DNA of 64,000 nt from Oikopleura dioica. Lineage: Eukaryota > Animalia > Chordata. The stretch covers positions 12,276,001 through 12,340,000 of the forward strand of contig OU015567.1 in NCBI GenBank assembly GCA_907165135.1. The letters are read 5' to 3'. Positions within the stretch are counted from its first letter, which is position 1; the number at the start of each line of letters is the position of its first letter. Positions 15,023-33,710 of the stretch are shown here, one piece after another. The position numbers and the translations under genes are program-made. The notes beneath the pieces were generated by a model. It searched no databases. It had not been told where the DNA came from and saw only the letters and a program-made list of their open reading frames with translations.

Positions 15023-15390
15023 ATGCTTCTTTTCAAATATTTTTTGTTCTTTGGCGAGATTTTCGGCGGTTTTAATTTCGAACTCAAGAGACTATTCTAT
15101 CCAGATGATAAACTGAACCCGAAGAAAGAAAAGCGGCTCAAACGAAAACAAGAGAAACAAAGACAACTGAATCAATGCCTCGATGTTCCGAATGGATTTG
15201 TAACGCAATTTGCCGATTTGTTTCTGGTAAATTGCCATCAGGGCTTCTGCTTGGGAGCAAATACAGGGGCACCTTCAATTGCGATAATGGAGAGCTCAAG
15301 CCAAAAGCCGAATGCACATGTTGTTCAAATAGCTGCGATGGAGACTTGCCAACTGATCCAGAGACAACTTTTAGGCCGCCTATTTCTACT
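15023..15390 (+). CDS. 5' part of a secreted Cys-rich (oikosin-like) gene interrupted by the giant element
   Basis: MLLFKYFLFFGEIFG signal-like start, then QCLDVPNG...CHQGFC, NCDNGELKPKAECTCCSNSCDGDLPTDPETTFRPPIST ending at the ACT codon 15388-15390, directly before the TIR. 1-bp frameshift near 15253. Confidence 0.65.
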
Positions 15391-15676
15391 GGGACGGAAA
15401 AATATAAATTTTCGGTTTTGACAAAACATCGTAAACGTAATATTTTCGAAAATCTAAAAGTGCAGTTATGTCAAGCTTGAACTGCCATTCAAGAATCTTG
15501 AAAAAATTTTGGTTTTTACGATTCTAGTGCCCAGGCGGCGAGATCTAAGAAAAAGTTACGAACTCGCCTAGGGACCAGGGGTACTTATTTTTTCGGATTT
15601 TTTTTGGGCTCAATTATTCTCTATGATCCGAGGATTGTCATGATTGCTTCAGATCGAAAATTACTCATCGCAATCC
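15391..15676 (+). repeat. Left terminal inverted repeat (286 bp)
   Basis: Reverse complement of 32689-32976, identical by eye apart from a 2-nt length difference in one A/T run. Confidence 0.95.
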
Positions 15677-16380
15677 TGAAATATTGCGCAATTTATTATT
15701 TTCTCATATAATCTATTAAATTATAAAACCAATGCAAATTATATTGAATATATGGCCATGCTCGGCCGTTATATGTCCACTTTATGCCGAATTCGGTCGA
15801 GTTTGGCCGGAGGACTTCCTCGAGGACCACCCTGGTTGAAAACTAACTGCTGGAAGATCAATATTCTGAAAATCAACAAAAAGCCCTGAAGGGCCATCTA
15901 TTGCCATTTTCGGATATCTTTAGTCACTTTCTGCTGGAAGATGTCCCGGAAGACACTTTTGCTGGAAGAAGAACTGCTTGAAGACCAAAATTAGAAAAAT
16001 AATATAAATAGCCGTGGTAAGCCCTTAATTGCCAATTTGGGTCGACTTAGGCCATACAATGCCGGAGGGCCTCTTGGAGGACCCTCTTGCTGGACAACAA
16101 ACAACTGGAAGACCAATATAAAATATGTTTCCTTTCTGATAAACTTATGCCAATTGCCTAAAAACTCAATCAAAACTCATTCTCTTCTTGCATGCATGAA
16201 GATAAAGAGGTGTTAAAATGGAAACTAAGTCGCGCGATGTCTTGCTGTGCCGACTTCTTCAGAGGATTGGAGGTGAGAAAATAAAAGTCTTCGGGATCGT
16301 GCCGTACTACTATCAGCTGCTTTTATCAGTTGTTCAAGGCATATTTAATCAAGTTGTGGACCAGTAATTTCAACAACAAC

Positions 16381-19300
16381 ATGAAACTTTCAGTTTTTCT
16401 TCAGTTTGTTCTCGCTTTTATAGTGGCCAATTTTGTAAATGACTGCTTAAAAGACAACAAAAAAGAAATAACTGAAACGTTTAAATGGTTTTTTGGTACA
16501 GAGACGTCAACTGAGAATGCGACAGCAACTAGAGAACGTCGGTCTGCTGAACAAGAGGAAGTCGACCATAGAAAATTGTCATTCAACGTTGAAGACAATT
16601 TTTTAACGACGTACGTTAACATTAATTTTATTTGGGGGATCAGTCAAGCTGATAGATTCGGAAAACTACTTCTGGCGCTCATGAGTTAGTCACCGTGACC
16701 CAGAATGGAAGAGCCGATGACGCACTTGCTCTGAATAAGTAACAGAAATACCTTAATATTTTTGGCATCCATTTTATTGATTTTGTAGTCAAAGAGGAGG
16801 GCAGACTGAAACAGACCAGAAAGGCACTCAGCTGGCGCCATACTTGACACTACTGAATTGAATATATGGAGTGTCAAAAGTAACAGAAAATGAAGCAAAA
16901 AAATCCAGAATATGTTATAAATATCCAAGTTGAGCAATTTAATTTTTCTATTTTGTGTTTTGCAAATTAATTTCGAAGATGGATCTTATTTTACATACAG
17001 TTATTCTTAATCAGAGTCAAAAATTTGAATAGCGCTACATAAACTTAATTGAAGCTTTTCTTTTTGTCTCTTTATTCAGATGACATTTCAAGCCTCTTAG
17101 CTCTTTAGATATTTTGGTATTCATGAGCTAGTCACCGTGATCCAAAATTAATATTTTAATAATCCTCTTAATAAATGACAAAAGAAAGCAATAAAAGCAT
17201 CATCAATTCCAATTATAGTTGATTATTTTGTTTGTTTATTTGAATTATTGTAAATTTAAAATATATATATTTGACATTTTGGTCATCATAAGTTAGTCAC
17301 CATGATCTTTAATAAATTGATACTACGAATAACTTTCAAATCATTAAAAAATAGATCTTCATTCAATTTTTGAAAGAAATTGGCCATCCTAGAAATTAAT
17401 AGGCAATTAAAATTATACCTCTCGGCTTAAAGTGGATCTCATATGAGTATAATGCGTTCTCTTGAGTTGAAAAATAATTATATAATTAATTTATTCAAAA
17501 TTTCAGTCAACACCACGCTCGATTTACATGTTGGATATCATGAGTTAGTCACCGTGATCCAAAATTTTAAAGTTGATGATTCTTTGAATAAATGTCAAAG
17601 ATAATAGAAGTTGTCTTTATGATTTACCAAGCTTATACCACATTTAAGGATACATGATTCAAATAATTTGGTCATAAGTCAACAAAAAATGATATCGTAC
17701 ACACTGGAGATGAAATATCCTGCGCCATCACCAATGAATATTGAGTTTTCGGATTCGGTGAACAATGAGAAAAATCCAGCCGATCTTTCTTGTGGCATAT
17801 TTCTAGGATCGGTGACATAATTTTATTTTTAATATAGCCATAAACACAAATTGTCACTTTGTTGAAGCTCATTTGCTCTCTCGAAACATCTATTTGATTG
17901 TTGAAACTTTTTCAACCTGAATGTTGAAAGCGAAACTGCAGAAGATATCGAGCTAATGAATCCTGAGTTGCGAAAATACTTAAATTCGATCACGAGTCAA
18001 ATAATATCGTCAGACGGCTGCACTCGGCGCCAACTTTTTCAATTATCTTTAAGGAGCGGAAGCTAGATTGATTATTTACTGTATTGAAATTGAATAATTT
18101 TGAGCCTCCTATAAAGATCTCGACAAACGAGCGAGCCAATAAAAGATACTTGTATCGACATTCTTATTGCATCTTTTCAAAGGTTCATCGTTTTTCGTTC
18201 TTCACTGGACAGAGAAGACAATTTGCTTCGACAGTTAATGATGAGAAACTTTATCGTTAGTTTCTCTTCTGATGAAAAAGAAAGACTTTTTCACTTCGAA
18301 AAACTTCAAGCTTAATAAACATCAGCGCGCTGAGGGATCCAAAACCTTCAATGAAAGAATAATGGATGGAGAATTCGTTTTTGTAGAGAAGAAAAGCTTC
18401 TTGAATTACGATTGGCTTCGTCTTTCTTGGATACCCTTAAAGATTCGATTAAATCATCGTCGATTTTCGATTACATGAGTCACGACATGTCTGATGACAT
18501 AGACGATGAGTCTGGAGGAAAGGGAAGACGCTCATTCGATTTTCGCAAGTCTATCGATGAGCTCAGCTATAGTTTGCCATACTTTGGTTCTTATCGAGGT
18601 AATTTTTAAGATTAAGCATCAAATAATCATATTGTAGCGCATAAACAGACCGATGATCTCGAGCGCCGAATAAGTTCTGCTCTAACGGAAATTGAGGGAA
18701 ATGAAAAGAGCATCGCTTTAGCTGTTGGAAAAATACGGGCAGAAGCATTGAAAAACGACGAGTCTCTATTACTTCAGGCAAGAAGTAATTCCATTGAGCT
18801 GATGGATGCCCTTGAGGATCATCGTCAACGCTACAAAAAACTTTCAAACTTTGTGAGATGTATCTTGACAAAAAGTCAGCCATGCGCTGATATAGGTATT
18901 TTTAACCAATAGCTTCGTTCAATTTATCTTTTTTAGACTATCACTCGCAAGGTTATTTGAAGGCGCTCTGTCGAGGTAGCCAAAATCAAAATACGACTGT
19001 CGCGGCTCAGTTAGAGATAGAAAATTCATGCGAACTTATTGGTAAGCTTGAGTAACCTTATCTTCATTAATTATATTAAAGTCGGAAATTATTTATACGC
19101 AATCGATGAGCCGCATGTAAGTCTCTACAAAGACAATCAGACCTTTATTGGACTACGAGTAACAAGTAATCTGAAAGACTATTCAAGATTTTCTATTATT
19201 TTGTTTAGTGGAAGTAAAAATGCCATCTGTTATAAGACGATACCATGAAGTCAAAGTTGAATCAAGAGGACGTATAAATTTCGATTCGTACGAAGTTCCT

Positions 19301-20048
19301 GATTTGAACGACGTCATCATCGTTCGCGAATATTCAAATAATGAAAATAGTTTCAGATCTTTCCCGAGAAACAAGTTGTATGAGAAATTTTGAAATTTAA
19401 TTAAAATGCTCCTAGTTGTCAACAGGGAATCGGAGAGGCTTATCTCTGTCCATTGGCTTCTTCAAAACCAGGATTCGGGATGTTTCAGTACATGCGAATC
19501 TCTCAATCACCTTTTGAATTCGGTCGCACACACTACCACACGAATCGAGTCTGTATAGAATCGGGAAAGCAATCTTTTGCTGTTATAAAAAAGGAAGAAG
19601 GCATTGAAAAAATAAGAAGCCAAGGTAAAAATAGAGCTTTTGAAAAATATTGACATTATTTAAGCTGGAATCATCTGTTTGAACCGCAAATTCCGAACCT
19701 ACACAGCCGAAATTAAATCAAGAACCTTTATTATTCCAAAAAATTGCATCAATTACTTTGACTCCCGATAGCTTGAATGATTTGTATCAGTTCTCTTCTT
19801 TGACCCAAGAGACTTATTCTTGGTCCCATAGTGCCTTGACGCTTTTCGCAAATGGTCTCAATCTTTCTTCGTTAACTTACGAAAAGATTGATACTTTCAT
19901 GTCAAGTTCACGAAAAAGTCCTATTAATTCTGTTATATCTTTTTTCGACATTTTAAAAAGTGACATTAAGCTCTTTCTGATTGTTGTCATGATTATCTTC
20001 TCGTTCTTGTTCATTTTTCAATTTGTATTACAAAATTATAGAGAATAA
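16381..20048 (+). CDS. Spliced type I membrane glycoprotein with class I viral fusion protein (env-like) architecture
   Basis: Signal peptide MKLSVFLQFVLAFIVANF and RERR|S site. Later KGRR|SFDFRKSIDELSYSLPYFGSY (18520-18598), a heptad-like exon 18639-18896 ending CILTKSQPC, and a C-terminal TM LFLIVVMIIFSFLFIFQFVL before the stop at 20048. GT-AG introns at 18599-18638 and ~18897-18937. Continuity of the 16.4-17.6 kb part with the rest is inferred. Confidence 0.55.
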
Positions 20049-20629
20049 AAGTATTGATATGAATTGAAATTATATTATAAAAATTAAGATTGGTCCTCAG
20101 AAACAAAGACATGATTTTGACTTGTTTGTTCACCGTCAGGTAGATAACACATTTGTTCTTTCAACGTCACTTTTATAGTTATGCTGCTCCAATCGGCGAG
20201 ATCGAACTTAATGGCTTCGAAATGACGATGATTGGTCTTCAGCGCCACCTTTATCATCTGCTTATAAGTCCAAGACTCTTTCAAATTATTTTCTTTGCCT
20301 ATCTCTTAAAGTTTGCTAAGAAAAATTACAAATACGTTTGCTTTGTCTTTTTCATATTTTTCGCCGAATTTCTGTATGACAAATATATAATGAAATAAAT
20401 ATGACGTTCGATTATAAACTTTCTTGTTTAAGAATGATCTTGTTTTATGTTCTTATTGGAACTCTTGTAGCGATCTTCTTAACGTCCTTTGTTCTAATGA
20501 CTCATGTCCAAGGAAAAAATGATCCAGCAAGATTAATTGTTGGTCCTCTCGTTATTATGAAAGACATGACAGGTAATTTTTTGTCAAACACAGTCATGAA
20601 AAAAATTTAGAATTTTCCGAATTTAAACA

Positions 20630-23600
20630 GTGTTCAAAATGCGCAAATTTCTTCAAAAAATGCTCTATTGATGATCATGAAAATACGTGCACTGGTAATG
20701 ACATGTTAACTAAAAAAAATAATATATTTTTAAAGGAACCAAATGTGTTAGTTGCGGCATTGTTTTTCCATTTCCTGACGAATACAATGAACATCTTTAT
20801 GGAAAGTGCAGATACAGACGTTATTATGATTCACCTCAGGAGTTAACTGTGCCAAAAAAAATGCCTCAACCTGGTACGATAAATCATATTTTCCATTGAT
20901 ATTTAATCTTTTATAAGGTCGACTCAGTCAGCGAAATAAACGAATACAATGTGTCTTTTGCTTACAAAACATCGCAAAGACAGAATTTTACAAAAATCAT
21001 AAAGAAGAATGCAATGGAATAAAATGCAGATGCTGTCTTATGAGTATTCCTGCATCCGTTTTTCCATCTCACGCAAAGCTTTGCACGCTTAACTTTCGTA
21101 AAGATCGCAAATCCGACAAAACAATGGACGAGATTTTGGAGATATTCGAAAATGATGTCAATCTCGATGATCCGAAAAAAAAATATTCAAAAGAAGACAG
21201 AAAACGACGATATGAAGAAACTAAACTTAATAAAGAAATAAGTGAAGAAGAAAAATTCATCAATCGGAAAATTCTACGACAAAATCCATCTTCAGAGAAG
21301 ACTATCAAGCTAGCGGCAACAAGAATCGAAGAAATACTCAAGTCTCTAGATGAGACGACGATTTCATCTGTGTTCTTCTCGCTGGGACTACTTGACATTC
21401 GTTTATGCAAGGATTTCGTAAATCGATTTGGAGAAATATCATCAGATGCAAAGAGATCTTTTCTTGCTGCTCTTGTTCCAACGAATCCTGATGAATCTTC
21501 TATCCCATACATTGTCAAATCTTTGAGCAAAATAAATGTTAGTAAACATTCAACACTCACCGCAATTAGCGATCGACCGAAAATTTTGGCTCATCAATCT
21601 GTCCGAAAAAACCGAAGTGAGTTACTGACTGTTGACGAAAAAAGAAAAATAGCGAAAACGTGGTTGGAGAATTCATGTCCTATCGTTTCGAAAAATCGCT
21701 CAACGATGAACTTGAGAAAATCAAAAGTCGAGGATTTTTGGCTTCAAATTTATAATGAAATTGGTGCTTTTTACGAAACGAAGAAGTTCAAGAAAGGCGA
21801 CGAAGAGATTGTTAAGGTGCAAAAATTTATTTTGTCGACGACAACGCATGAAGTTTATGCGCTTGCACGTGTGAAGTTGGGATACTTTGTTTCGGAACAT
21901 CTTCTGAATAAATTTCGTCCAAAAAACGTTGTTGTGAGGAACAGTGATAATTACTGGGGTCTTCAATGTCAATGCGAGAACTGTACGAATGGCGAATCTG
22001 CGATTAACTTTATTAACAAAGTTCGACGAGAATGTTTGTTAGAGGAAGAAAGAAAATCATATGAATGGGTGACACTGGAGAATTTTTTCAAGAAAACTGT
22101 TTGTGGTGCTTCAATTTTCGACAATTTCCACTGCGCAGATATTAAAAAACATAATCGTAAGTTTTTTTTTGATTCATTTATTGACACCATTTAAAGAATG
22201 CTTCCGTCACCTGAAGTACGATAAATCTTGTGAACGATGCAATCACGTTTGCGACGCGAGCGCTGTCGAAGACATTATAAAGGATCTTTTATCAAATAAA
22301 AAGGGATCGAAACATTATCGAATACCCCACTTTAAGGTAGAAAATAAGCAGAACTAAATAATAATTGACATGTCTTAAGGTTCAAGACAGCAAGGAAATC
22401 ATTTGGGTACCTCAAGGTTCCGAAACCGCTGTTATGACTTACGAAGAAGCTGTTGAATTTTGTTCTCAGAGCCTTAAAAAAATGCATGCTCATCATTTCG
22501 ACAGAAAACTGTCGCACGAAAAACGCATCAAATGTAACGCCGGTGAAGTCGAGCTCGATCGAAATCAAATTTATGTTGAGGTTTGCTTACATTTTGATTT
22601 ATTTAGTTAAATATGCAATAGTTCGATTATGGAAAAAGTTTTGGTATACTGCCATCAAGAAGAACCCAAGGACAGTTTCTGGTAAGGATTTAAATTTCGA
22701 TATCGAATCCTTATATATATTTTTTTAGAATAGTCAAACAGTTGCTAGCCTGACTTACGTTTTTTCTGCCTACGATTTTGATGAAGAAGAATGGTTTAGA
22801 TACGTCTTCCACGGGCTATCCTATGAGAAAGATATATCAAGCATCAAGATTCTTGAAGACCAAGCATTCGAGAGAGCGGCTAGCCGGGGTGTTGACCTTA
22901 CTGGTCGAAAAATTCTTGCTGTCAGCGATAATTCTGGTGGCGAATTTAAGGAAAGGGTCGACGAGAAAAAATAACGTTTGGTTTTCGAGATTTTTCGGTT
23001 ACGAGATACCCCAACTTTGACCGTTTATTGAAATTTTTTGGGTTTTTCCGCATTTCTGAGACAGAAATCCCGATTCTCGTCGACCTCCCCCTTAAGAATC
23101 GCTTCAGCCTTTCAATCTTGGAAAGTCTTCGTCCTACGTGCTTACGGTTTAAATGTCCGAGTCATGGCAAGCTAGGATAAGCAATTTATGCTGATTTTAT
23201 TTTGAATCAAGAATTTCAAAAAAAAATAATTGCAAATGCTTATTCGCTTCAAGTCTCTTATTGATGGTTATCATGGTTTTATTCCAAGTGTAGCTGACAA
23301 GTACAATTGCATTGATGAAGGATTAGATGTACCGGAGTTAATTGAGAAACTGAAAATTGAAGAGGATCGATTAAGAGCTGAAAGACCGTACGAAAGATAC
23401 TTCGAGCGCATTTTCGTAAATCTGGATGACTACGAGGGATTGGAGCGCAGAGAAGTGTTTCCTTCGCCTTTTCACTGCCGAAGAGTGCGGATGGCTTGTT
23501 ATTCGGAGGATCGATCAAAAATTCTTTTTACAAATACGATTTGCCCTGCAAACTGTATTCCCTGCGCTTCTGGTGACTTTTATCATTGCGAAACAACGAC

Positions 23601-24661
23601 TCGTGAGGTACTTGAGCGATCTGTGAGACACGCTGAACCTCGGGAAAGAGAAAAGAAGAAAAAGAATTCTTCTCAAAACAGGAGTCAAAGCCAAAGCCAG
23701 AGCAAAGTGCAAACTCAACGTGATAGTCAGGTTTGGAAGAGTTCGACGATTTCAGCCAATGATGATAGCGTCGAAATAACAATTGATGACGATGAAATAA
23801 TTGCAAAAAAGATTATACAACCCCTTCCAAAAATCATCGATCCGAAGAAAGGAGAAGAAGACATATTACGAATTTCTCCAAAACTCTCTTTACCCGAAAC
23901 AAATATCGATAATGGAATGTTGAAAGAAGCGATAAAAGAAATGACAAAAGAAAAGAGTTCAGATTACAAGAAAGAAATCAATGATCGTCGAAATGCCTTC
24001 AAAGCGAATAAACCGTATCATTTGGACCTTTTGGCGCATATAATTAATTTAATGCAAACCGAAATTCCTCAAAATTGTCTCGTTGTCGATCCAAACAAAA
24101 CTTCTGCAATTCTTGAAGAAGCAAAGAATGACATTAATAATTTCCTGCCGAAATTGTTACATTTCTATGACTGCGACATAGAAAGCATCAATCGAATCGT
24201 CTTCACCTTTCTGCTGAATGATCAGTCCTTCAGGGCAAAATCTTTTATTGGAATTGGGAGACGTAAGGGACATTATGTCGTCGTTGGTTTGTTAAAAGAC
24301 GAGAAAAAAATTATTCTTTATGATCACGAGAATGCTTATAAAGATGATTATTGGAATTATGGTAAGTAATTATTATTATGAAAAAATAAAACAATTTTCT
24401 TCAGTTGGCGAAGTTGTCACCAAAATATACAGTCATTTATGGGGAGATAATTTTGACATCTTCATTCCAGAGACGATGCCCCAGAATGCTGATGACTGTG
24501 GACCTCATTGTATTTTAAATACTGAAATTCTGTCCACTAAAAATTTCAATTTCATGAAATCGCCATATAAATTTACTCCTGCTGACATTTTAAATCTGCG
24601 GCAAATGCATCTCAAATCATGGATCAATAAGAAATATGAAAAAACTGCATATTTTGAATAA
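20630..24661 (+). CDS. Zinc-finger + Sola-like DDD transposase + Ulp1/C48 protease fusion (spliced)
   Basis: Four CxxC..H..C fingers (20630-21080), then CQCENCTN. Catalytic-type motifs VE/FDYGKSF..RTQGQF (~22620-22680), SDNSGGEFK/NR (22924-22950) and PSHGK/SLIDG (23157-23268), then H...CPANCIPC..GDFYHC. C-terminal GHY..YDH..PQNADDCGP. The start exon is uncertain. Confidence 0.75.
22950..23091. mobile_element. 142-bp MITE with TTAA TSD inside the transposase coding sequence
   Basis: TTAA at 22946-22949 and 23092-23095. Termini GGAAAGGGTCGACGAGAA / TTCTCGTCGACCTCCCCC match at 14 of 18 inverted positions. Confidence 0.75.
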
Positions 24662-24748
24662 ATATTTAATCAATAGATCGATGAGGTGAATGTCCTTAGT
24701 CTTTTTATTGTAATGAGAAGTTATTAAAAATTCAAAGGAACAAGAGAA

Positions 24749-25610
24749 TTAAAGCAGAAGTTTTTTTTGAAGAATTTGATACGCTATCAATTTTCTCAAG
24801 GTTGACGCGTGCTTTTGGGTAAAGGCGAAGACAGCATCGCGCGAAAGGTATTCTGCGAATGTCATAGCGAAAATTCCACAATCTTGAATATATTTAAATT
24901 TATGAAATTTTGCATAAACAAACCGAAATTATTCATCTGTCGAGGGATGTTTTCGGCGATTGATTCTATCTTCCAGTCCTGACTGAGAGGTTTTTCTTGT
25001 TTTAGCAGATGCTCGGCCTTTATAAAGGAATTCGATCAAAACATAAAGTTCAATAAAAATACCTTTAAGTATTCAAAAAGAGTCGTTACGCACTCAGTAT
25101 TGTATGCCCCTAATGAATCAAGGTAGCAAAGTCTTTTTCTTCTCATATCTGCATAAGCAAGAGTCCAATGATTTGGTTTCTTAGGAAAAGGCTCACTTGG
25201 AGTGGGAACAATCATATTTATCGGAAAGAAGACTAAATCGGATTGAAAAATGTTGAATTTTTTCGTCCATCGCTTCACAGAGTTGGGTCCGTGTTCTTTA
25301 AGCTTGGTGTAGAAGAAGCTACTCAACGATTTGATCCGAGGCATCGTTGAAAGTGTTTGGGATCGCATCTCGATCAATTTTAAGTAAAAATTGATCACCT
25401 AAAGGGAAGTGAAACATATTCTTAGTTGCTTATTTTTGGCAATTACCTCTCCATCAATCCAAGTGGATTCATTTAAGGTCTCCATGTCGGATTTGGTGAC
25501 AAACATTTGCGGTATCTCCGAAACGATGTCATTTGCATTCTTTCCCGCCAATGAGGATTTGACAAATTGACTCATCTCATCGGTGAATTTCGGAAAGGGA
25601 TCACTTAGAT
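24749..25610 (-). CDS. SENP1/Ulp1-like SUMO protease catalytic domain (upstream exons possibly to ~27200)
   Basis: TLNESTWIDGE/VINFYLKLI, SSFFYTKL..SVKRWTKK, NHWTL..YLDSLG, IPRQMNNF/DCGIFAMTFAEYLSR...LLL* ending at 24749. Confidence 0.88.
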
Positions 25611-25638
25611 ATTATTTTAAATTTTTTTTAGATTAAGC

Positions 25639-26025
25639 CAGGGCCGCAGCAAAAAAAAACCAGAATGGCCGCTCAGCCAATTCAAAAAATTTCTAGCAGT
25701 GGCTCAACTCAGCTTAGCTCAGTGATTTTAAAAAATGATGTGACCTGCCTAGCGCAACTTACACAATTATCACTCGGCTCAGCTCAGCTCAGCTCAGCTC
25801 AGCACAATTATTTTTGAATATGATCAGTTCTCCTTAGCTCAGCTCAGCACAATTATTTTAGAATATGATCAGCTCTGCTCAGCTCAGCTCACTGATTTTA
25901 AATAGTCTACTAGCTAAGCTCTGCTCAATGATCTCTGCGAAAGGCAGCTCAGCTCAGCTCAGCTCAGAGAATTTTCCGCGCAGCTCAGTTTAGCTCAGCA
26001 AAATAGAGAAAAAATTGCGACTCTA
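25639..26025. repeat. (GCTCA)n-rich repeat, probable non-autonomous hAT-like MITE
   Basis: Many CAGCT/GCTCA pentamer runs. Imperfect termini CAGGGCCGCA / TGCGACTCTA. No clean TSD seen. Confidence 0.6.
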
Positions 26026-28364
26026 GGTCTAAGAAATGAGACGGCGAGAATGAAAAAAAATTGGCCACATAAAGTCAGTCTAAAAACCCGTCAGAACAGG
26101 GCAATTTTCACATTTTACGGACCCCCCCGTCAAGATTTGGAAATAACGAATTTTGAAATTTTGACCTCGGATTCGAGTTCCTCATGCCGAAAAACTATTT
26201 TTTCGCTTCATTTTTTGTCGCTCTATCTCCACTCTAACACCCTGAAAATTTGAGTTAAAGTTTTGAAAATCGTAATGGTGATGCGCTGAGAGCGTACTAG
26301 GCGCGAGTAACATTTTCACGGAAAATGTGTAAATCACGGATTTTTGCTAATTTCATTATTGGAAAGCATATTTTTATTAATAAATTAACATAAATTATTA
26401 TTTTTCAAGTGAAACTTTCTATGAATTTCAAAAATAACAGCGTGGTGCCCTCAAGGTTGACCCAAGCTTTATTTTTCTTTTTAAAAAAATTTTATAACTT
26501 AAGGTTCTCCCAGAAAAATCGATGTTTGAAACTTTAACCTACTCTCAAGACACCCTTAAGAAGTGGACGAGGGTGCCTGTACTTCTGGTGCCCTAGACCA
26601 ACTATCGGGCTATACTATAGGACCAAAATTTTTCGAAAATCTTAAGGGGGTCACTCCAAAATTACTGTTTGAAAAAGTTGTTTTCACATGACGGAGGGGT
26701 CCTTAAGGGGCTCCCCAACGATTTTTCGATTTTTCGAATCTGAATTTTTTCTCTTCAGATTATAATTCTCATCCAAAAAACTGTGTTCAAAACGTTAGCA
26801 TTTTTCGATTTTTTTTTAAAAATTGTCTTGAATTAATCTTGAAGTGTCAAATTTTTAAAAATCAAACTTATTTACCTGGGCATTTTTTGCGAAACAGCTC
26901 GAGTCACAACATTTTTCGCATTTTCCTTCTCCTTGTCCGTTTTTGGCGAGCAAAGAGCATCTGTTGATCCTTGAGAATAACGGTTGAGAGCCGCTCCATT
27001 TGAGCCGCCGATGTTCTGGCGGATACGTTCCAACTTATAGGCCGAGTCATTTTGCGGGTGGGCTGCGTTCACTGGGATCTCGGTCGAGAAGCGGTGGTCA
27101 TACTCGGTCGAGTAGCGTGCGCGGGGGTTGTTTAGCGACGGCGCAGAGTAGCGGTTTTGGTTGCGATTCGTTTGAATGTCCCCATAAGGACTGAAATAGG
27201 AAATAAAAAGAGAGGGAAGTACAAAAGCCTTTTTGTCAAACAGAATATTTTTTCTTGAATTGCGCTATTTGAAATCTGTTGTTTCACCGATTGATTCAGG
27301 CGGATTTTCTAAGCTTAAGATGATCAGTGCAAAAATATGTCTTGAGCGCCTTCATCCAGCGCAAAAACGCCGTCGAAATGCAGCAAAGCCAAAACAAGAA
27401 CAAAGCTCTTTGTGTTGAACTTCTGAAGCTGTTAACTATTGACAAGAATTAAAGGACTCTTGAAGCAATTTGAAGTGAATTTATAAAGATTTTACAGTGG
27501 CTGACATTTTTTGAGCTCTCTTACGAACTGCCAAAGTGTGCGTCGCCCGCGCTTTTCCGATAGTATCTACAGTAGCTTATTGTACGCTTGTACTGTTTCT
27601 TTGGGGGGACTGACATTAAGTAACCTGACTCAGAGTTCTGAAACAATATCCATAAAAGCCGCGTGTCGGCTTTTTCAAAAACAAAGCCGCAAAGCGGTTT
27701 CGCCAGAATTCAAAAATAAGCAAGAATGGTAGTTTTACAAACCCGGACTCAGATTTTTACACAGGTTGCCGAACCCAGTCTCCAATAGCAAGTTCAAACA
27801 TTTAACTAAAAAAATTATCAAATATATTCAATTTATGTTCGTTGATCATTAATTTCTGCCTGAAAAAGATGTCAAGTCCCTCAAAAATTTTGGTCAATAA
27901 AAGGATAATAATTATGTGCATTAACGCGTAGAAAGTTGTATATTCAAGAACTTGGATGTACGATGCTTGTATTTCACACTTTATTTGCACTGACAATTTT
28001 TTTGGTTCAATAGAATATTTTGACAAAAATTGACATCAAAAATTGAAAATTTGCATATTTTTATTCATGAAAAACTTTATTTCGCTCTTTTTTAATAAAA
28101 TTTAAGGGTATACCCCTCTTTAAATTCATTTTTTTTATAAAAAACGAAAATCTGAGTCTAATGGTGGATAGAAAAGGGTTGACAAAATCAGGCGGCGAAA
28201 ACTAGAAAAAATTTTGGCCAAAAAAAATCGGTCAAAAATCCCATCATAGTAGGGGCATTATCGCGAAAATGCACCAAAAATGGTCATTTTCTTTTCATTT
28301 TTTTTTCATTTCACCCCCTAAATCTTATGAAGGGGGCGAGTTCCTTAATAAACCATCAATATTT

Positions 28365-28892
28365 TTACCTTTGAATTGATTCCGGTGTTTCTTTGTCAAG
28401 TTTGAATCTATCGTCATTAAAGTTCTGTTCCATTTGAAAGTTTCGTCGTGAGTTTTTTTCGAATTTGGCAGCTTGAAAAGGCGCTTGGAACTCTCTTTTG
28501 ATTCGAAAATCGGGCAAAAGAACCGGTTGTTCCATAAGAGAGTCAGCTTTGTTAATCTCAGAGAGGTGTTTATTACATACATCACGTGCAATTAATATTA
28601 ATTTTGTTTTAAATCTAGGTTGAATATTTATCCGTTTAACGGATGAAATGAAATTGGGAAAATTTTCCGAAAGATAGTATAAACTAAAATACTTCTTATC
28701 AATTTTTAAATTATGTAATCTTTGTAAAAGATGATGGGGAATCCCTCTCGTCTTTCTAACACCGTAAAGCTCTCTAAGTTCCTTCTCTCTCTCTTGTCGC
28801 TCTTGCTCTTTTTTGCCCTGATTTTTCATTTTTATGATAAATTGAACGAATTCGAAGTTAAATTTACCAGTAAACAACTGACAGATATGCAT
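28365..28892 (-). CDS. Unknown basic protein exon (element cargo)
   Basis: 175-aa ORF, MKNQGKKEQERQEREKELRELYG..., with no recognisable family. Confidence 0.4.
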   Translation of the reverse strand: MHICQLFTGKFNFEFVQFIIKMKNQGKKEQERQEREKELRELYGVRKTRGIPHHLLQRLHNLKIDKKYFSLYYLSENFPNFISSVKRINIQPRFKTKLILIARDVCNKHLSEINKADSLMEQPVLLPDFRIKREFQAPFQAAKFEKNSRRNFQMEQNFNDDRFKLDKETPESIQR

Positions 28893-29280
28893 CAGATTGA
28901 AATCATTTTGTCAGTAAAATTGTACCTTTGAAAGGTAGATTTTTATCAAGAACACCTGCTTTATTCCGCAACACAAGTCGCCAAGATTTTCAATCATCCC
29001 TTTCCCAACTCTCTTAACTTGGATAAAGAACTGGTTGAAGAAATGGCGATGAAAGAAATCTCTGATATCGAATCGTTGCGAAAAGAAATCTCCGGCAAAA
29101 TCGAAGATTACGGAAAGTTATTTGACTCGATCAGTGATAATTGCTGGAAGAATATGGAAGCTGGCGATGTCTCAAAGCATTTTACGTGCCGATCGCTGTC
29201 AAGAATTTTGAGATCCGGCCAACAACTCAAGAATTCTCTGGGTTTTATGAAAACGCAAAGACAGAAAAAGAAGCCCTGGC

Positions 29281-29750
29281 GTCGAGTTTGAGCTTCTTCA
29301 GCCGCAGTTTGACGATAGCGAGAAAACTGAGCTCGTCTCTGATGTCGAAGATGAAGAAGTCGAGGTCGAGCAAGTACTCATTGAAGAACAGCAAGCGCTT
29401 TTGGAAGAAGACGCTTAGAAGAAGCAAGAAAAGCCAGTAAATGTGATAACGCGCGCGAAATGATTGAAATAATGGATGGCGTGTTGGAAGTGAAATCAGA
29501 AGATGTCCTCAAAATCGATGTCCCAAAACCTGCATTCATGGATGATCCAGATAAAAAGGGAGTCTGATTGGACTAACGAAGAAGTTAAACAGGCAAAAGA
29601 GTACGATAAGAAAGATGCAGCTCTCGAAGAAGAGTGAACGAAGTTTAAAAAGTCACTCGAGATCGAAGCAAAAAAGATTCAGCAGGGAATCGTCGAGGGA
29701 ATGCACTCTTTTGATCTTACTAATTCAAGCCTGTACGCTTTTGCTTGAGC
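29281..29750 (+). pseudogene. CFAP43: Decayed fragment of cilia/flagella-associated protein 43 captured in the element
   Basis: FELLQPQFDDSEKTELVSDVEDEEV...DNAREMIEIMDGVLEVKSEDVLKIDVPKPAFM...WTNEEVKQAKEYDKKDAALEEE*TKFKKSLEIEAKKIQQGIVEGMHSFD matches the recalled CFAP43 C-terminal segment (MMGGVLEVKKEDIL..IPQPAFM..W.EEE.KQ.K.YEKK...L.EER.KYRKSLE.ELKKLQ). In-frame TAG/TGA stops and a frameshift. Confidence 0.7.
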
Positions 29751-30067
29751 AGACTGGTATTTGTGTCGTTTCGGGCTCTGGTTTCCGATAAAAATAAATC
29801 AACTGGCCCTAGAAGATAAGAAATAGACAGGAAACAGGTGTACTTGCTCTAACCCTGAGTCAGGGTCCCTACCTGTTAGTTTTCTGTCTATGGGACACCG
29901 TTTTGCGGTAGCAAACCTTAGTCAGGATTAGAAAAAGCTTTAATAAAGAGCCAAACAGCTCTTTCAAACCCTGAGTCAGGTTTCCACACAGGTTTTCGAG
30001 CCAAGCGAGCCCTTTTGAAATTTGACTATGATTTGACCCTTTTTTATAATTTTTAACCCCTCTTTTC

Positions 30068-31090
30068 AGGCCGGAAGCTGGCACTTTCGAACGATATTTA
30101 TGCCGCCATAAGAGAAGATGGAAAAATTCGCGAAGCTGTTCACCGAGTTCCACCTCAGAATCCTCGCCAAGTAAGAGTAATTTGTCGAAACGCCGCTTCT
30201 TAAATAAAAATGAAGAAGAGACGCTGTCCGACGAGCAAAAGACAGCCAAGGGTCTGGCGGAGATGCTCTGCGACCCATCGCGGACGAACGTCCAGCTGAG
30301 CTTTGAAAACGGCCAGAAAGCGACCCTCGAGCTCGCTAGAAGGCAAGAAGTTCCGTCCCAGGGCGATATTATTCGACCTCCGTTCAAAGAATATTCACTC
30401 AACTCGCCAAAAGCCCCAGAGCTCGCCAAAAAGAGCATGAACCTTGCCGAGAGCCAAAAACGAGCAAAAACACAAGCAGAAACACAAAAATAGATGCACC
30501 AGTTCTTCACTGCCGCTTGTTTTTACGCACTCAGCGCTAGTAGCTACCGTGAAGCCTATTTTTATTAACCTGGAAAAGTTTACTTACCAAATGTATCCAA
30601 AACATGCCACAAACTTCCAAACTGACGCTCAAACCTTTCCGATGGCCAAAAATGGCCCTGTAAAAGAGTCGCCAAAAAGCCAGGGAAAAATCACCGACTT
30701 CTGGAAGGCGAAAACGCCGAACAAAAGCGCCGTTGAAGATCAAGATCAGCCGCTGAAAAAATCCCCCAAAAAGACAGCGAAAACGATGACAGAAAAGTCC
30801 TCCCCTGAAAAAATGCCTGGTAAAAAAGCTGGAAGCCCTGGTGACAAGCGGCTTGAAAAACTCGGCCAAAAAGAGCCCGTTAAATCGAAAATTCCAAAAA
30901 TGGATGACGGCACGTCGAAGTTCTCTGTTGGGAGCGTCAGAGCTGTTTTAAACAGAGCCAAGTACGTTTTAATCCTCTTTTCTAGCGACTAAAGTACTTT
31001 CTTTATCCCAGAAATGATGATAGGAAATCTGGTTCCTTCGTGCGTTAGCGCCGCTGCGACTCAACTTTCAATTTTGTAAAATTGTGAAAT
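30068..31090 (+). CDS. Lys/Ser/Pro-rich protein with PIP-box-like motif (element cargo)
   Basis: ORFs 30182-30493 and 30444-30992 with GT-AG introns. QGKITDFW at 30681-30704. Confidence 0.45.
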
Positions 31091-31204
31091 GATGATTGTC
31101 TGCATTTTTTCTGTAACTGATTCCCAAACCTGCATCTATCCGATTTAAATTCAGTATATATAAAAGAGAAAATTACAAAATCGTGCTCAAGACATGGGAA
31201 TGGG

Positions 31205-31314
31205 TAGGGAAACTCGATGAAAAATGATCCTCAGCTTCTGGGCTTTCTAAATCTGTATTATACTCCCTCTCTACTAAGCCCAGAAAAAAGCTCATTTTTC
31301 ATCGAGTTTCCCTA
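31205..31314. mobile_element. 110-bp hAT-type MITE with 8-bp TSD
   Basis: TIR TAGGGAAACTCGATGAAAAATGA / TCATTTTTCATCGAGTTTCCCTA. TSD GGAATGGG at 31197-31204 and 31315-31322. Confidence 0.9.
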
Positions 31315-31708
31315 GGAATGGGCGATCTCTTTGCCAGCCTTGTGCGAGTTGGCCGATCTTTCATAATCTAGAAGAACTCTTTATCGTAATTCCGCCTTGC
31401 CAAACTCAAGTTAAACCGATTTTCCTGCGAAAAGTTGCGACGTTTTTAAAGCGACTCTTTGTGACTTCCCAATTTCGACTTAATTAGAATTCCATCACGT
31501 GGCTTCCCACAGTAACTGTTAAAAGACGAACGTGCAATCAAGATGCACCAAGCACAAGTTGCTACTGATCATCTGATCATTATCGTGGCTGGCCCCTTAA
31601 TCAACTCCGCTTTTTAAAACGCGACATGCTGTGATTTCCTGCTGGGGTGACTTTTCTAAAACAATTCTAACAAAACTCGGCAAAAGATAGATATATATAT
31701 ATATTTAT

Positions 31709-32177
31709 TTAACAATATCTATCAGCAAATCGGTAATGAAAACGACGGTGATAGCGCATTCCACAAATAAAAATCGTTGATGTTGTCGAAAGTGCCGTCG
31801 AAGAAGTCGTTGTCGTAGTAGTGGTCGTTGTCGTAGTAGTGGTCGTTGTTGTCGTGGTGGTCGTTGTTGTCGTGGTTGGCTCATCTCCTGGTAGAACTAA
31901 ACAAAATAAAGATTTTCATCATTTCAAGTTCAACTCTAAGATTTTTATCAATTGTCAACTGATGACTTTTGATAATTGCCCCGAAAACGAAAGTCCGAAT
32001 TAGCGACACCAAGCGAGCAGATTTCTTTTTTTGATTTTTACCTGAAAAGAAGACGACAAAAGCAATAAAGCTGAGGAAAACAAGAAGCGCAACTATTTTC
32101 TCTTTCATCTCTACTCTGGATAGTTTATCACGATCTTCCATTTTTATCAGGGGTTTCTTTATTGACATTTTCAGCAT
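31709..32177 (-). CDS. Small membrane protein with poly-Thr stalk (element cargo)
   Basis: TM segment IVALLVFLSFIAFVVFF in ORF 31881-32231. After a short intron DEPTTTT(~20 Thr)SSTALSTTSTIFICG...RYC*. Confidence 0.5.
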
Positions 32178-32688
32178 TTTGAGCCAGAGTCCCTCCAATA
32201 AGTTATTTTGAACTTTGACTGAAAGCGTCAAAAATGTCGATAAAAAAACCCCTGGGTTTTATTGTCTTCGTAAAAGAAAAATTATTCTTGAGTTTTAATA
32301 ATCAAAAGGACTCTCAACTTCTTAAATCTTTCAAAAAGAGGGCGCTCTAGGAGGAGAGCGCTCGCCGCGGGCGGGAAACAAACGGTGAATTTACAGATAA
32401 TCAGTAAAGACTATCATTATCCTTGTTCAAATTTATGATAAAAATCATTATTTTTATAAATAAGATGCTCATTTAAAAGAATTTTATTTAAAATCTGTCA
32501 AAAATTCCGATCAAAAATCGAAATCTTGGCTCTAGAATCAAAGATAATCAAAACCGGAAGTCGAATTTTCGTTCAGTCAGATAAAAAACTTTATTTGAAT
32601 TAGTATTACCATCCATAAAGCGTTGAAATTTAGTAAAAATGCGACTTTTATCATTTTTCTAGTAAAAATTTGTTTTGATCATATCTTC

Positions 32689-32976
32689 GGATTGCGATGA
32701 GTAATTTTCGATCTGAAGCAATCATGACAATCCTCGGATCATAGAGAATAATTGAGCCCAAAAAAAATCCGAAAAAATAAGTACCCCTGGTCCCTAGGCG
32801 AGTTCGTAACTTTTTCTTAGATCTCGCCGCCTGGGCACTAGAATCGTAAAAACCAAAATTTTTTTTCAAGATTCTTGAATGGCAGTTCAAGCTTGACATA
32901 ACTGCACTTTTAGATTTTCGAAAATATTACGTTTACGATGTTTTGTCAAAACCGAAAATTTATATTTTTCCGTCCC
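32689..32976 (-). repeat. Right terminal inverted repeat (288 bp)
   Basis: Reverse complement of 15391-15676. Confidence 0.95.
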
Positions 32977-33710
32977 ACTGCGAATCCTTTCACGCCAACA
33001 AATGGCCCTGCAAGCACGACTTCAGGTTTCGTTCTCGATTAATTTTCCTACTTTTGATTTTCGACAATATATGAACGTGAAACAGGGCCCTGTAAAACCT
33101 TAGAAGGGTTGATATCAGCGCAATATGTGGACGCATGGATGAGGCACGACAAATTTGGATTCGCGGTTGAAATAAAAGTTCCTGCAAATCTTCTTGATTT
33201 CTCGATTTCAATGGATTTTCAGGGCAGTAATTCATTCAACATACAGGTTGTAAAATGAGCTCCGGTCTCCGATAATTGTTTAATTTAGACTTGGAATTTG
33301 GAATATTGGAACTTCTACCGTGGCAATACTTTTGTTGTGCTTCATTCAAAACGTAGCCCAGAAGATTTAGAAGATCGTTTTTCAAAACTCATTGTTGTTG
33401 AAGGCCTCAATCTTCAAAAATATCGTACGTTCAGCTTCATTTATAAACGTTCTTAAAAAATTCTAGCAATCATTCAATTCTACGGAGGAAAAGTAAAGAA
33501 TCACAACTGCTTCAATGGCAACGTACTAAGTCGAAACAATATTCCTCAGATAGGAAGAAGCTATGAAGAAATTCTGGATAGAAAGAAGTTCAGAAAACGA
33601 AATCTTACGAAAGCATCAGTTCATAACGTCAGAAAATTATACTTTCCACAAAAAAAATAATATTTTAGGTCGTGATACGGAACAACAAGCTCTTCGTCAA
33701 TCCTATTTAA
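32977..33710 (+). CDS. 3' part of the interrupted secreted gene
   Basis: In frame from the ACT TSD: TANPFTPTNGPASTTS, then spliced exons GPCKTLEGLISAQYVDAW..FAVEIKVP..., TWNLEYWNFYRGNTFVVLHSK..., IIQFYGGKVKNHNCF...NVVIRNNKLFVNPI* ending at 33710. Confidence 0.7.

What the first reader, a model, noticed from the sequence alone, without database searches (positions are those of the whole stretch)
15391..32976. 17.6-kb TIR-bounded giant DNA transposon carrying env-like, SUMO-protease and captured host genes
Seen: ~287-bp nearly identical inverted repeats, GGG...CCC termini and an ACT duplication. Inside are a spliced Sola-like transposase fused to a Ulp1 protease, a second SENP, a fusion-glycoprotein-like gene, a CFAP43 fragment, a PIP-box protein, a Thr-stalk membrane protein and nested MITEs. 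No DNA polymerase B, capsid, RT or LTR was seen. Known: Sola elements are usually a few kb, and Polintons need pPolB and integrase with 6-bp TSDs. Inference: a recently active, cargo-laden cut-and-paste element of a possibly undescribed type, potentially with an extracellular or cell-to-cell stage.
Basis: partly seen in the sequence, partly recalled or inferred. Interest (0 to 1): 0.95.

Follow-up and report, generated by a model that had tools for sequence, protein, structure and literature searches.

The report
Large inverted-repeat mobile element in Oikopleura
A 17.6-kb stretch bounded by near-identical inverted repeats in the tunicate Oikopleura dioica is one of two very divergent copies of an undescribed transposon-like element. 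Its conserved core pairs an unclassifiable transposase-like protein with a membrane glycoprotein gene, but movement has not been shown.

Summary
The inverted repeats are real: 294/296 nt, 98.3% identical, at 15391-15684 and 32681-32976. The window is Oikopleura dioica (Okinawa) chr2.

A second element of about 17.8 kb lies 7.5 Mb away on the same chromosome. Its repeats are 82-88% identical, and it has the same gene order at 35-50% amino-acid identity. The shared genes are a signal-peptide/TM-anchored glycoprotein-like gene (G), a roughly 1,200-aa protein (T) and a small basic protein (X). T has an N-terminal hydrophobic helix, four C2HC fingers, a candidate RNase-H-like core and a C-terminal Ulp1-like domain. 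The outermost ~40 nt of the repeats are conserved between the two copies, so the repeats belong to the element.

- **Confirmed:** the second SENP, the PIP-box protein and the Thr-stalk membrane protein, as copy-specific cargo.
- **Not supported:** "Sola-like" (no 4-bp duplication, no testable homology), the "CFAP43 fragment", and similarity of G to any known viral glycoprotein.
- **Doubtful:** the ACT "duplication". The sister copy shows those bases may be part of the repeat.
- **Not shown:** mobility. Each copy is single, no empty site could be found, and T carries one nested insertion.

T and G have almost no relatives among about 1.8 billion proteins. I read this as a probable new family of cargo-carrying DNA transposon, with moderate confidence.

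The parts
15391..15684 (+). Left terminal inverted repeat (294 nt). The outer ~40 nt are conserved with the sister element.
32681..32976 (-). Right terminal inverted repeat (296 nt), 98.3% identical to the left arm.
15388..15390 (.). ACT just outside the left arm. It is either a 3-bp target duplication or the imperfect outer end of the repeat (unresolved).
32977..32979 (.). ACT just outside the right arm (same caveat).
16381..20048 (+). G: multi-exon gene for a predicted type-I membrane glycoprotein-like protein (hydrophobic leader, dibasic sites, long helix, 7 Cys, C-terminal anchor). It is conserved and collinear with L001:5247-9417. The exon chain of the 5' third is not resolved.
16680..17560 (+). 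Interval inside G (between the leader exon and the next conserved block) holding four direct copies of a 22-nt motif.
20401..24661 (+). T: multi-exon gene of about 1,200 codons for the transposase-like protein. It is interrupted once by a nested short inverted-repeat insertion. No stops or frameshift-like junctions were seen in the blocks shared with L001.
20401..20572 (+). T first exon: hydrophobic helix (KD19 2.5), spliced in frame to the finger exons. The intron position is shared with the P0001 model.
20611..21090 (+). T: four C-x2-C-x11-12-H-x3-4-C fingers, also present in P0001.
22560..23610 (+). T: candidate RNase-H-like catalytic core (conserved ..VEFDYG.., ..SDNSG.., ..HGK / IDGYH.., DEGLD, YFER) followed by a Cys cluster. 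This is the most conserved part (about 50% identity).
24020..24658 (+). T: C-terminal Ulp1-like domain (conserved G-H, D, P-Q..D-C-G). Pfam C48 is only E 0.039.
24749..25611 (-). Second protease gene, SENP1/2-like (clear C48). It is absent from the sister element, so it is copy-specific cargo. The public model extends to 28433.
25612..28364 (.). Repeat-rich, non-coding-looking spacer (CTCAG microsatellite, 45-nt tandem repeats). Not shared with L001.
28365..28892 (-). X: small basic protein, conserved with L001:16058-16582(-) at 35-41% identity, with no known domain.
28932..30992 (+). Right-arm + strand ORF series (Lys/Glu/Ser-rich). It includes the annotated 133-aa protein P0004 (30591-30992) with a PIP-box-like Q-G-K-I-T-D-F-W. 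No homologue was found, and it is not shared with L001.
31205..31314 (.). Perfect 23-nt inverted repeat pair with a 64-nt spacer (small palindromic unit).
31712..32258 (-). Membrane protein with one TM helix and a poly-Thr stalk. L001:2409-2858(+) has the same architecture without significant sequence similarity.

Best explanation
Window 15391-32976 (OU015567.1:12,291,391-12,308,976, Oikopleura dioica Okinawa chr2) is one copy of an undescribed, very low-copy family of elements of about 17.6-17.8 kb bounded by 300-400-bp inverted repeats. The family core is three genes in fixed order and orientation. G is a type-I membrane glycoprotein-like protein. T is a protein of about 1,200 aa with an N-terminal hydrophobic helix, four C2HC fingers, a Cys-rich stretch, a candidate RNase-H-like (DDE-type) core and a C-terminal Ulp1-like domain. 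X is a small basic protein on the opposite strand. The arms hold cargo that differs between copies. Most likely mechanism: T is the element's transposase. It binds the conserved outer ~40 nt of the repeats (TGGG..G...AAATATAAATTT..) and moves the whole unit as DNA by cut-and-paste, picking up host genes or fragments in its arms. G, and perhaps the other membrane proteins, is an accessory function kept by selection, plausibly helping the element reach other cells. SHOWN: the repeats, the second collinear copy, conservation of G, T and X across 50-65% amino-acid divergence, conservation of the repeat tips, the clear SENP cargo, and the absence of polymerase, integrase, RT and capsid signatures. 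INFERRED: that T is a transposase, the DDE residues, any target duplication, mobility itself, and every function of G.
For: The TIRs are 98.3% identical over 296 columns and are the only such pair in 64 kb. phmmer of the 425-aa T exon against 1.84 billion representatives found only P0001 (E 5.9e-71) and a 62-aa fragment. P0001 lies in a second element with inverted repeats of about 410 nt (82-88% identity) spanning 17.76 kb. tblastn and chained ORF comparison give collinear blocks: G has 13 blocks, about 506 aa, 35% identity. T has 13 blocks, about 1,114 aa, 39% identity. X is 41% identical over 88 aa. There are no frameshift-like junctions in either copy. The outer ~40 nt of all four arms align while the rest of the arms do not. 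In T, the order ..VEFDYG.. / beta-hairpin / helix / strand / ..SDNSG.. fits beta1-D, beta2, beta3, alpha1, beta4-D of RNase-H-like transposases. That is the only stretch of the AlphaFold model with pLDDT 65-74. Ulp1 domains fused to transposases are documented for Ginger1 and Mutator (PMC2836005). Superfamilies without a Pfam model exist (PMC5751038), so the blank in Pfam does not rule out a transposase. Cargo differs between copies: SENP1/2-like here and a Surp fragment in L001. The element is more AT-rich than its flanks.
Against: T has no detectable similarity to any transposase, integrase or IS family (Pfam, NCBIfam, PDB sequences), and both structure predictions were too poor to use. No target duplication is reproducible: ACT here may be part of the repeat, and L001 has no 3-bp duplication. 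Each copy is a singleton in the 90% clusters. No empty site or second genome could be reached, so mobility is unproven. T begins with a membrane-type helix, which is odd for a nuclear enzyme. T of this copy carries one nested insertion. Near-identical 295-nt repeats in a single-copy cut-and-paste element are not explained by transposition itself.
Confidence: 0.5

Rival explanations
1. It is an integrated virus-like element rather than a cut-and-paste transposon: the remnant or endogenous form of an enveloped or vesicle-borne DNA element with a linear genome and terminal inverted repeats. In this reading T is a membrane-anchored multifunctional or polyprotein-like product with its own clan-CE cysteine protease, and G is the entry protein.
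For: The two copies are similar in size, 17,586 and about 17,761 bp. At least three products have membrane helices: G, the T N-terminus and the Thr-stalk protein. A clan-CE (Ulp1/adenain-type) protease domain is typical of Polinton-like and large DNA viruses (established knowledge). G is conserved as a core gene. O. dioica already hosts env-carrying Tor elements (PMC4402516).
Against: No capsid, polymerase, packaging ATPase or integrase signature exists in any ORF of 70 aa or more in either copy. Nothing related was found in IMG/VR or JGI metagenome contigs with the conserved stretches. G matches no viral glycoprotein family. The genes have spliceosomal introns at shared positions.
Confidence: 0.2
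2. It is a giant, cargo-laden member of the Sola superfamily.
For: T has an acidic-residue pattern compatible with a DDD/DDE core. Sola has no Pfam model, so a blank in Pfam is expected (PMC5751038).
Against: The 4-bp target duplication that defines Sola (Bao et al. 2009, from my own knowledge; the paper was not retrievable) is absent. The flanks read TACT versus ACTG here, and nothing comparable exists in L001. phmmer of the 425-aa N-terminal exon of T (which does not include the catalytic core) against 1.84 billion proteins found no relatives outside this family. The catalytic core was tested only by the less sensitive word-seeded search, which found only this family.
Confidence: 0.1
3. It is not mobile at all: a host gene cluster (G, T, X) enclosed by an inverted segmental duplication and present as two old paralogous loci on chr2.
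For: Only two genomic copies exist, each a singleton. There is no demonstrable target duplication. The genes carry introns and sit in an RNA-seq-guided annotation (PMC8008620).
Against: In both loci the inverted repeats stop at homologous, conserved tips, and only the tips are conserved. The cargo between the core and the repeats differs completely. No orthologues were found in the annotated Norwegian O. dioica proteome or any other animal among 1.84 billion representatives. The third lineage is equidistant at about 40% identity. Base composition differs from the flanks.
Confidence: 0.12
4. The repeats are two independent MITE insertions, or an assembly artefact, that happen to bracket unrelated genes.
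For: Nothing beyond the general possibility. The assembly is Nanopore-based (PMC8008620).
Against: A second locus has diverged repeats with homologous tips bracketing the same genes in the same order. No other copy of the repeat exists in the window or fetched loci.
Confidence: 0.03

Closest known systems
Ginger1 and Mutator-like (KI-MULE) DNA transposons with Ulp1-fused transposases
   Same: TIR-bounded DNA elements whose transposase carries a C-terminal Ulp1-type cysteine protease domain. Transposase genes may contain introns (PMC2836005).
   Different: Ginger1 has a Gypsy-type integrase core (Pfam rve), and MULEs match PF10551/PF00872. Neither is detectable in T. Those elements are 3-7 kb, have 4-bp or 8-10-bp duplications and carry no glycoprotein gene.
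Polinton/Maverick virus-like transposons, including the nematode Mavericks that carry a fusogen
   Same: 15-20 kb, long terminal inverted repeats, a clan-CE cysteine protease, and in nematodes a membrane-fusion gene linked to horizontal transfer (bioRxiv 10.1101/2022.07.12.499685).
   Different: No protein-primed polymerase B, rve integrase, packaging ATPase or capsid genes were detected. There is no 6-bp duplication. The genes are intron-rich.
Tor elements of O. dioica and other env-carrying Ty3/gypsy elements (errantivirus-like)
   Same: Same host. These are mobile elements that keep a membrane glycoprotein gene with a furin-type site, a Cys set and a C-terminal anchor (PMC4402516, PMC13524379). 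G has comparable gross features: K-G-R-R, the (F/Y)-F-G-S-Y motif, 7 Cys and a C-terminal anchor.
   Different: Tor elements are LTR retroelements with gag and pol. Here there are no LTRs or RT. Homology of G to Tor Env, or to F- or gB-type Env, was not testable (no comparator could be fetched) and no Pfam family matched.
Teratorn (a piggyBac transposon fused with a herpesvirus) and other giant transposons
   Same: A cut-and-paste backbone associated with virus-type genes. Large size for a TIR element (PMC5601938, PMC6431247).
   Different: Teratorn is about 180 kb, has a recognisable piggyBac transposase and a full herpesvirus gene set. Here nothing viral is recognisable by sequence.
Sola superfamily
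   Same: A DDD/DDE-type transposase without a Pfam model, and TIRs.
   Different: The 4-bp duplication is not met. Homology is untested. The size and gene content are unlike described Sola elements.

Membership tests
Sola superfamily | 4-bp target site duplication | tested here: not met
   The four bases outside the arms are TACT (left) and ACTG (right). L001 shows no 4-bp repeat either.
Sola superfamily | Transposase significantly similar to Sola1-3 DDD transposases | not testable with these tools
   No Sola profile exists in Pfam (PMC5751038), and no comparator sequence could be fetched. phmmer of the N-terminal T exon and the word-seeded search of the T core returned only this family.
Polinton/Maverick | Protein-primed DNA polymerase B and retroviral-type (rve) integrase | tested here: not met
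   Pfam scans of all ORFs of 70-75 aa or more in both copies gave no such hit.
Polinton/Maverick | Double and single jelly-roll capsid proteins | tested here: inconclusive
   There is no Pfam hit. Fold-level detection was not possible: the AlphaFold models had pLDDT 33-45.
Polinton/Maverick | 6-bp target duplication | tested here: not met
   The flanks show no 6-bp direct repeat.
Zator | Transposase related to the 'transposase 36' family (PF07592), and a 3-bp duplication | tested here: not met
   No PF07592 hit appears even at E 10. The 3-bp ACT is present here but not in L001.
Ginger1 | Gypsy-integrase-like core (rve, GPY/F) plus a C-terminal OTU or Ulp1 domain, and a 4-bp duplication | tested here: not met
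   The Ulp1-like C-terminus is present, but there is no rve match and no 4-bp duplication.
Mutator-like elements with Ulp1 | MULE/MuDR transposase domain (PF10551, PF00872), and an 8-10-bp duplication | tested here: not met
   No Pfam match, and no such duplication.
DDE/RNase-H-like transposases in general | RNase-H-like fold with three acidic catalytic residues | tested here: inconclusive
   Conserved D (..FDYG..) and D (..SDNSG..) occur in a beta-beta-alpha-beta context of the only moderately confident model segment. The third residue is not assignable, and the fold search was meaningless.
Peptidase C48 (Ulp1/SENP): second protease gene 24749-25611(-) | C48 catalytic domain above the Pfam threshold, with His/Asp/Gln/Cys | tested here: met
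   PF02902 scores 58.2 bits against a cut-off of 20.7, E 1.4e-15. SENP1 E 7.8e-19. ..H-W....D-S.. and ..Q-D-C-G.. are visible in the translations.
Peptidase C48 (Ulp1/SENP): C-terminus of T | C48 catalytic domain above the Pfam threshold | tested here: inconclusive
   The score is only 14.2 bits against a cut-off of 20.7, E 0.039, on the last exon. The PDB profile searches were blank. However, G-H, D and P-Q..D-C-G-P are invariant between the two copies.
Viral class I (F-type) or class III (gB-type) fusion glycoproteins / Tor Env | Sequence or fold membership in a known fusion-protein family | tested here: not met
   There is no Pfam family at E up to 10 and no PDB sequence match. The model has pLDDT 32.6. 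Only leader, dibasic site, helix, Cys and anchor topology are present. Comparison with Tor Env itself was not possible.

The most novel reading that the evidence does not exclude
A new superfamily of eukaryotic DNA transposon whose obligatory gene set includes its own membrane-fusion-type glycoprotein and a membrane-anchored transposase-protease. This would be a DNA-transposon counterpart of the env-carrying retroelements, able to pass between cells (soma to germline) or between species without a capsid.
Probability: 0.2. Interest if true: 0.9.

Novelty: new variant of a known kind. Interest (0 to 1): 0.62.

Why it matters
O. dioica has one of the smallest animal genomes. It is thought to have purged most transposon clades, and 44% of its repeats are unclassified (PMC8008620). 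A DNA element that has kept a glycoprotein gene next to its transposase-like gene across deep divergence would extend the "env-carrying mobile element" theme from LTR retroelements (Tor, errantiviruses) and Mavericks to TIR elements. It would also add a transposase type with no recognisable relatives. If the glycoprotein-like gene mediates transfer, it bears on how DNA transposons reach the germline and cross species. If not, the family is still a clean case of gene capture by a large TIR element in a compact chordate genome. It also flags a chimeric public gene model.

Tried and rejected
**Protein database searches**
- The search for homologous proteins with the 425-aa T exon found nothing.
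- The same search with full-length P0001 returned only P0001 itself.
- Only the region-restricted search (P0001 residues 540-728) found P0003, which turned out to be the window's own chimeric gene model.

**Domain and structure-sequence searches**
- Pfam, NCBIfam and PDB-sequence searches of T pieces, P0001, X and the right-arm ORFs gave nothing meaningful.

**Structure prediction**
- AlphaFold of P0001 with a 6-row alignment gave pLDDT 44.6.
- AlphaFold of P0003 alone gave pLDDT 32.6.

**Collection scans**
- Scans of JGI metagenome contigs (two) and IMG/VR (two) with conserved T stretches and P0003 found no relatives.
- One call failed for lack of conserved columns.

**Empty-site search**
- Looking up the neighbouring single-exon host gene returned only the reference chromosome.

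**Comparison of the element arms**
- Comparing the arms of the two copies found no significant similarity. One search also printed far too much noise.

**Literature**
- The Sola paper and the Yuan & Wessler paper are not held.
- No paper mentions Zisupton together with Ulp1 or SRR23998815.

**Discarded analyses and ideas**
- A first tblastn-based junction count was unreliable because alignments ran through stops. I replaced it with the ORF-chain count.
- I rejected KDZ/Zisupton, hAT (BED-like fingers), piggyBac, CACTA and PIF, because their Pfam models do not match.

Full report
**1. The observation**

The inverted repeats are real. The repeat finder reports two abutting blocks: 15390-15506 / 32861-32977 (117 nt, 100% complementary) and 15501-15684 / 32681-32864 (184 nt, 98%). 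They are separated by a 2-nt length difference in an A-run. blastn gives 98.3% identity over 296 columns. No other long inverted pair exists in the 64 kb. The arms start GGGACGG and are flanked by ACT on both outer sides. The interval has 34-38% G+C against 40-46% in the flanks. The window has no tRNA or Rfam match.

**2. Where the window comes from**

I ran phmmer with the longest internal exon (20917-22191, 425 codons) against 1.84 billion representative proteins. It returned only two hits:
- P0001: 728 aa, E 5.9e-71, 35% identity.
- P0002: a 62-aa fragment.

P0001 is Oidioi.mRNA.OKI2018_I69.chr2.g5202 of Oikopleura dioica. Its assembly, GCA_907165135.1, is the Okinawa reference (PMC8008620).

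A later region-restricted search found P0003 (g7439), whose sequence is identical to exons in the window. Its locus L003 equals window 8475-32974 at 100% identity. The window is therefore OU015567.1:12,276,001-12,340,000, and the element is 12,291,391-12,308,976.

P0003 is a chimeric gene model. It joins glycoprotein-like exons to transposase-like exons and skips the 425-codon exon.

**3. A second element**

The P0001 locus is L001 (chr2:4,744,745-4,768,864, reversed). It contains inverted repeats at about 827-1239 and 18184-18587, 82-88% complementary and about 17.76 kb from end to end. Between them lie the same genes in the same order:

| Gene | Window | L001 | Comparison |
|---|---|---|---|
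| G | 17049-19907 | 5256-9204 | 13 blocks, about 506 aa, 35% identity |
| T | 20601-24658 | 10041-15671 | 13 blocks, about 1,114 aa, 39% identity; about 50% in the core |
| X | 28368-28910 (-) | 16187-16450 (-) | 41% identity over 88 aa |

At the DNA level the copies are unalignable apart from one coding stretch.

Aligning the four repeat arms shows that only the outer ~40 nt are conserved between the copies: TGGG..G...AAATATAAATTT.C.....T..CAAAA..TCG. This is what one expects of protein-binding ends. It rules out two unrelated MITEs or an assembly artefact.

A third lineage, about 40% identical to both copies, is seen in a 910-nt Logan contig from SRR23998815.

All proteins are singletons at 90% clustering. 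Nothing related was found in JGI metagenome or IMG/VR contigs.

**4. The target duplication**

- In L001 the inverted repeat runs seven bases further out than GGG (TAGCATT on both arms).
- The three bases next to GGG are A-N-T in all four arms: ACT, AGT, ATT, ATT. So ACT/ACT differs from an imperfect repeat extension only at its middle base.
- The right arm's outer ten bases match L001 at 8 of 10 positions, and the left arm's at 6 of 10.
- L001 has no 3-bp direct repeat under any choice of tip.
- If the tips lie seven bases further out, both copies show a 2-bp direct repeat (AT here, CC there). That reading is post hoc.

I consider the duplication length unresolved. A 4-bp (Sola), 6-bp (Polinton) or 8-bp duplication is absent.

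**5. Gene T (20401-24661, + strand)**

The exon chain can be read with short introns. Most are canonical GT-AG. Most sit at positions shared with the P0001 model or with L001.

The product has these parts:
- **Hydrophobic helix.** It starts with a 19-22-residue hydrophobic helix: Kyte-Doolittle 2.5 here and 3.2 in L001.
- **Zinc fingers.** Four C-x2-C-x11-12-H-x3-4-C fingers follow.
- **Helical region and Cys cluster.** Next come a long helical region and a Cys cluster.
- **Candidate catalytic core.** Then comes the most conserved part, with ..VEFDYG....SDNSG....HGK, IDGYH, DEGLD and YFER.

In the AlphaFold model of P0001 (mean pLDDT 44.6), the only moderately confident segment is a hairpin-helix-strand unit leading into SDNSG, with pLDDT 65-74. 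That fits the beta2-beta3-alpha1-beta4-Asp part of an RNase-H-like core. This is a hint, not proof. The fold search was meaningless.

Pfam, NCBIfam and PDB sequence or profile searches found no transposase, integrase or IS family. According to PMC5751038, the superfamilies Tc1/mariner, hAT, CMC, Merlin, MULE, piggyBac, PIF, Transib, P and Ginger have Pfam models. [quoted passage not shown] T is therefore either one of the latter or new.

The C-terminus keeps G-H, D and P-Q..D-C-G-P invariant between the copies. It gives a sub-threshold Peptidase_C48 hit, E 0.039. I call it Ulp1-like, with weak support. Such fusions are known in Ginger1 and Mutator (PMC2836005).

**Integrity of T in this copy:** one break, a nested insertion of a short inverted-repeat element within coding sequence. 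I saw no in-frame stops or frameshift-like junctions in the blocks shared with L001.

**6. Gene G (16381-20048, + strand)**

G has these features:
- **Leader exon:** a hydrophobic leader and R-E-R-R. L001 has R-S-R-R at the equivalent place.
- **Spacer:** an interval of about 0.9 kb with four direct copies of a 22-nt motif.
- **Annotated exons:** these encode K-G-R-R, a conserved (F/Y)-F-G-S-Y motif, a helical stretch of about 85 residues ending in C-x7-C, a beta-rich part and seven Cys.
- **Last exon:** a strong membrane anchor (KD 3.0) and a short tail.

I detected no breaks in the conserved blocks. The exon chain of the 5' third is unresolved.

No Pfam family matched at E up to 10, and no PDB sequence matched. 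The single-sequence model was useless, with pLDDT 32.6.

The gross features recall what is published for Tor3b/4b Env of the same host: a furin site, F-X-G, seven Cys and a C-terminal anchor (PMC4402516). They also recall F-type Env of Ty3/gypsy elements (PMC13524379). No comparator could be fetched, so this is a lead and not a test.

The firm point is different. G is a conserved core gene of the family, kept open across a divergence at which T itself is only 35-50% identical.

**7. Other content**

- **X** (28365-28892, - strand) is conserved and has no known domain.
- **The second protease gene** (24749-25611, - strand) is a clear SENP1/2-type C48 enzyme. It is absent from L001, so it is probably captured.
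- **The 133-aa protein P0004** carries a PIP-box-like Q-G-K-I-T-D-F-W.
- **The Thr-stalk membrane protein** (31712-32258, - strand) has an architectural counterpart in the opposite arm of L001 (2409-2858, + strand), without significant sequence similarity.
- **The left arm of L001** holds a partial Surp module: PF01805, E 1.4e-9, profile positions 1-29 of 53. That is a captured host-gene fragment.
- **The 'CFAP43 fragment'** was not found.
- **Replication and capsid genes:** no polymerase, integrase, RT, capsid or ATPase signature appeared in any ORF of 70-75 aa or more in either copy.

**8. Interpretation**

The best reading (confidence about 0.5) is a new, very low-copy family of cargo-carrying TIR DNA elements.
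- T is the transposase acting on the conserved repeat tips.
- G is a maintained accessory gene.

Mobility, the catalytic residues and any role of G are inferences.

The rivals, with my probabilities:
- **Integrated virus-like element (0.2).** Favoured by the membrane proteins, the protease and the similar sizes. Disfavoured by the lack of any capsid or replication gene.
- **Non-mobile paralogous host clusters (0.12).**
- **Giant Sola element (0.1).**
- **Two MITEs or an artefact (0.03).**

Two facts remain unexplained. One is the near identity of a 295-nt repeat pair in a single-copy element. The other is the membrane helix at the start of a presumed nuclear enzyme.

**9. Novelty**

Known analogues combine a DNA-transposon or virus-like backbone with envelope-type genes. 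Examples are Mavericks with a fusogen, and Teratorn. Others fuse Ulp1 to a transposase, as in Ginger1 and MULE.

None combines TIRs, an unclassifiable transposase-like protein and a conserved glycoprotein-like core gene without polymerase or capsid. I rate it a new variant of a known kind. There is about a 0.2 chance that it is a genuinely new class.

**10. Disclosure of slips**

- While reasoning I located the nested insertion in T. I also noted to myself how the reading frame continues beyond it. Neither its place nor that reasoning is reproduced here, in the notes or in script output.
- In my reasoning I also recalled, from memory, short PIP-box motifs, one human protein sequence and several transposase motif patterns.
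- One search printed an over-long, uninformative hit table.

Noticed in passing
window 18476-22971 (public model g7439 = P0003): The public gene model is a chimera of glycoprotein-like and transposase-like exons. It skips the 425-codon exon at 20917-22191. The sister model g5202 (P0001) starts at an internal Met and stops early, and its continuation is annotated as a separate 221-aa gene.
   Followed up: yes
L001:3456-3743 (-): A partial Surp module (PF01805, E 1.4e-9, profile positions 1-29 of 53) lies in the left arm of the sister element. It is a captured fragment of a splicing-factor-type host gene.
   Followed up: partly
window 16680-17560: A 22-nt motif (CATGAGTTAGTCACCGTGATCC, 0-3 mismatches) occurs four times, all in direct orientation, and nowhere else in the window. 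It sits between the leader exon of G and the next conserved block, and its first copy overlaps the end of the leader ORF.
   Followed up: partly
window 31205-31314: A perfect 23-nt inverted repeat with a 64-nt spacer lies in the right arm. It could be a small palindromic element or a hairpin.
   Followed up: no
window 15112-15390: An unannotated Cys-rich ORF in the left flank stays open right up to the element boundary, so the element may sit inside a host coding exon. No orthologue could be looked up.
   Followed up: no
L001:10254-10762 and L001:13370-13984: Dense clusters of short tandem and inverted repeats (unit ..GACTAGGTTCGTG..) sit inside two long annotated introns of the sister T gene.
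   Followed up: no
window 27740-27772 and L001:1667-1699: A 33-nt stretch is 88% identical between the two elements. It lies in otherwise unalignable non-coding DNA, and on different arms.
   Followed up: no
window 15391-32976 versus L001:827-18587: The two copies differ by only about 1% in total length (17,586 versus about 17,761 bp), although their arms hold entirely different cargo of different sizes. This could be coincidence or a size constraint.
   Followed up: no
window 6928-13800: The host context upstream comprises a 908-codon Thr-rich mucin-like ORF on the - strand (7.4-9.5 kb, highly repetitive) and two trypsin-family genes (annotated PF00089 in L003/L004).
   Followed up: partly
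L002 (Logan contig SRR23998815_976052): A third lineage of the T protein is about 40% identical to both O. dioica copies. It has an intron where the window has none. The source organism of the run is unknown.
   Followed up: partly
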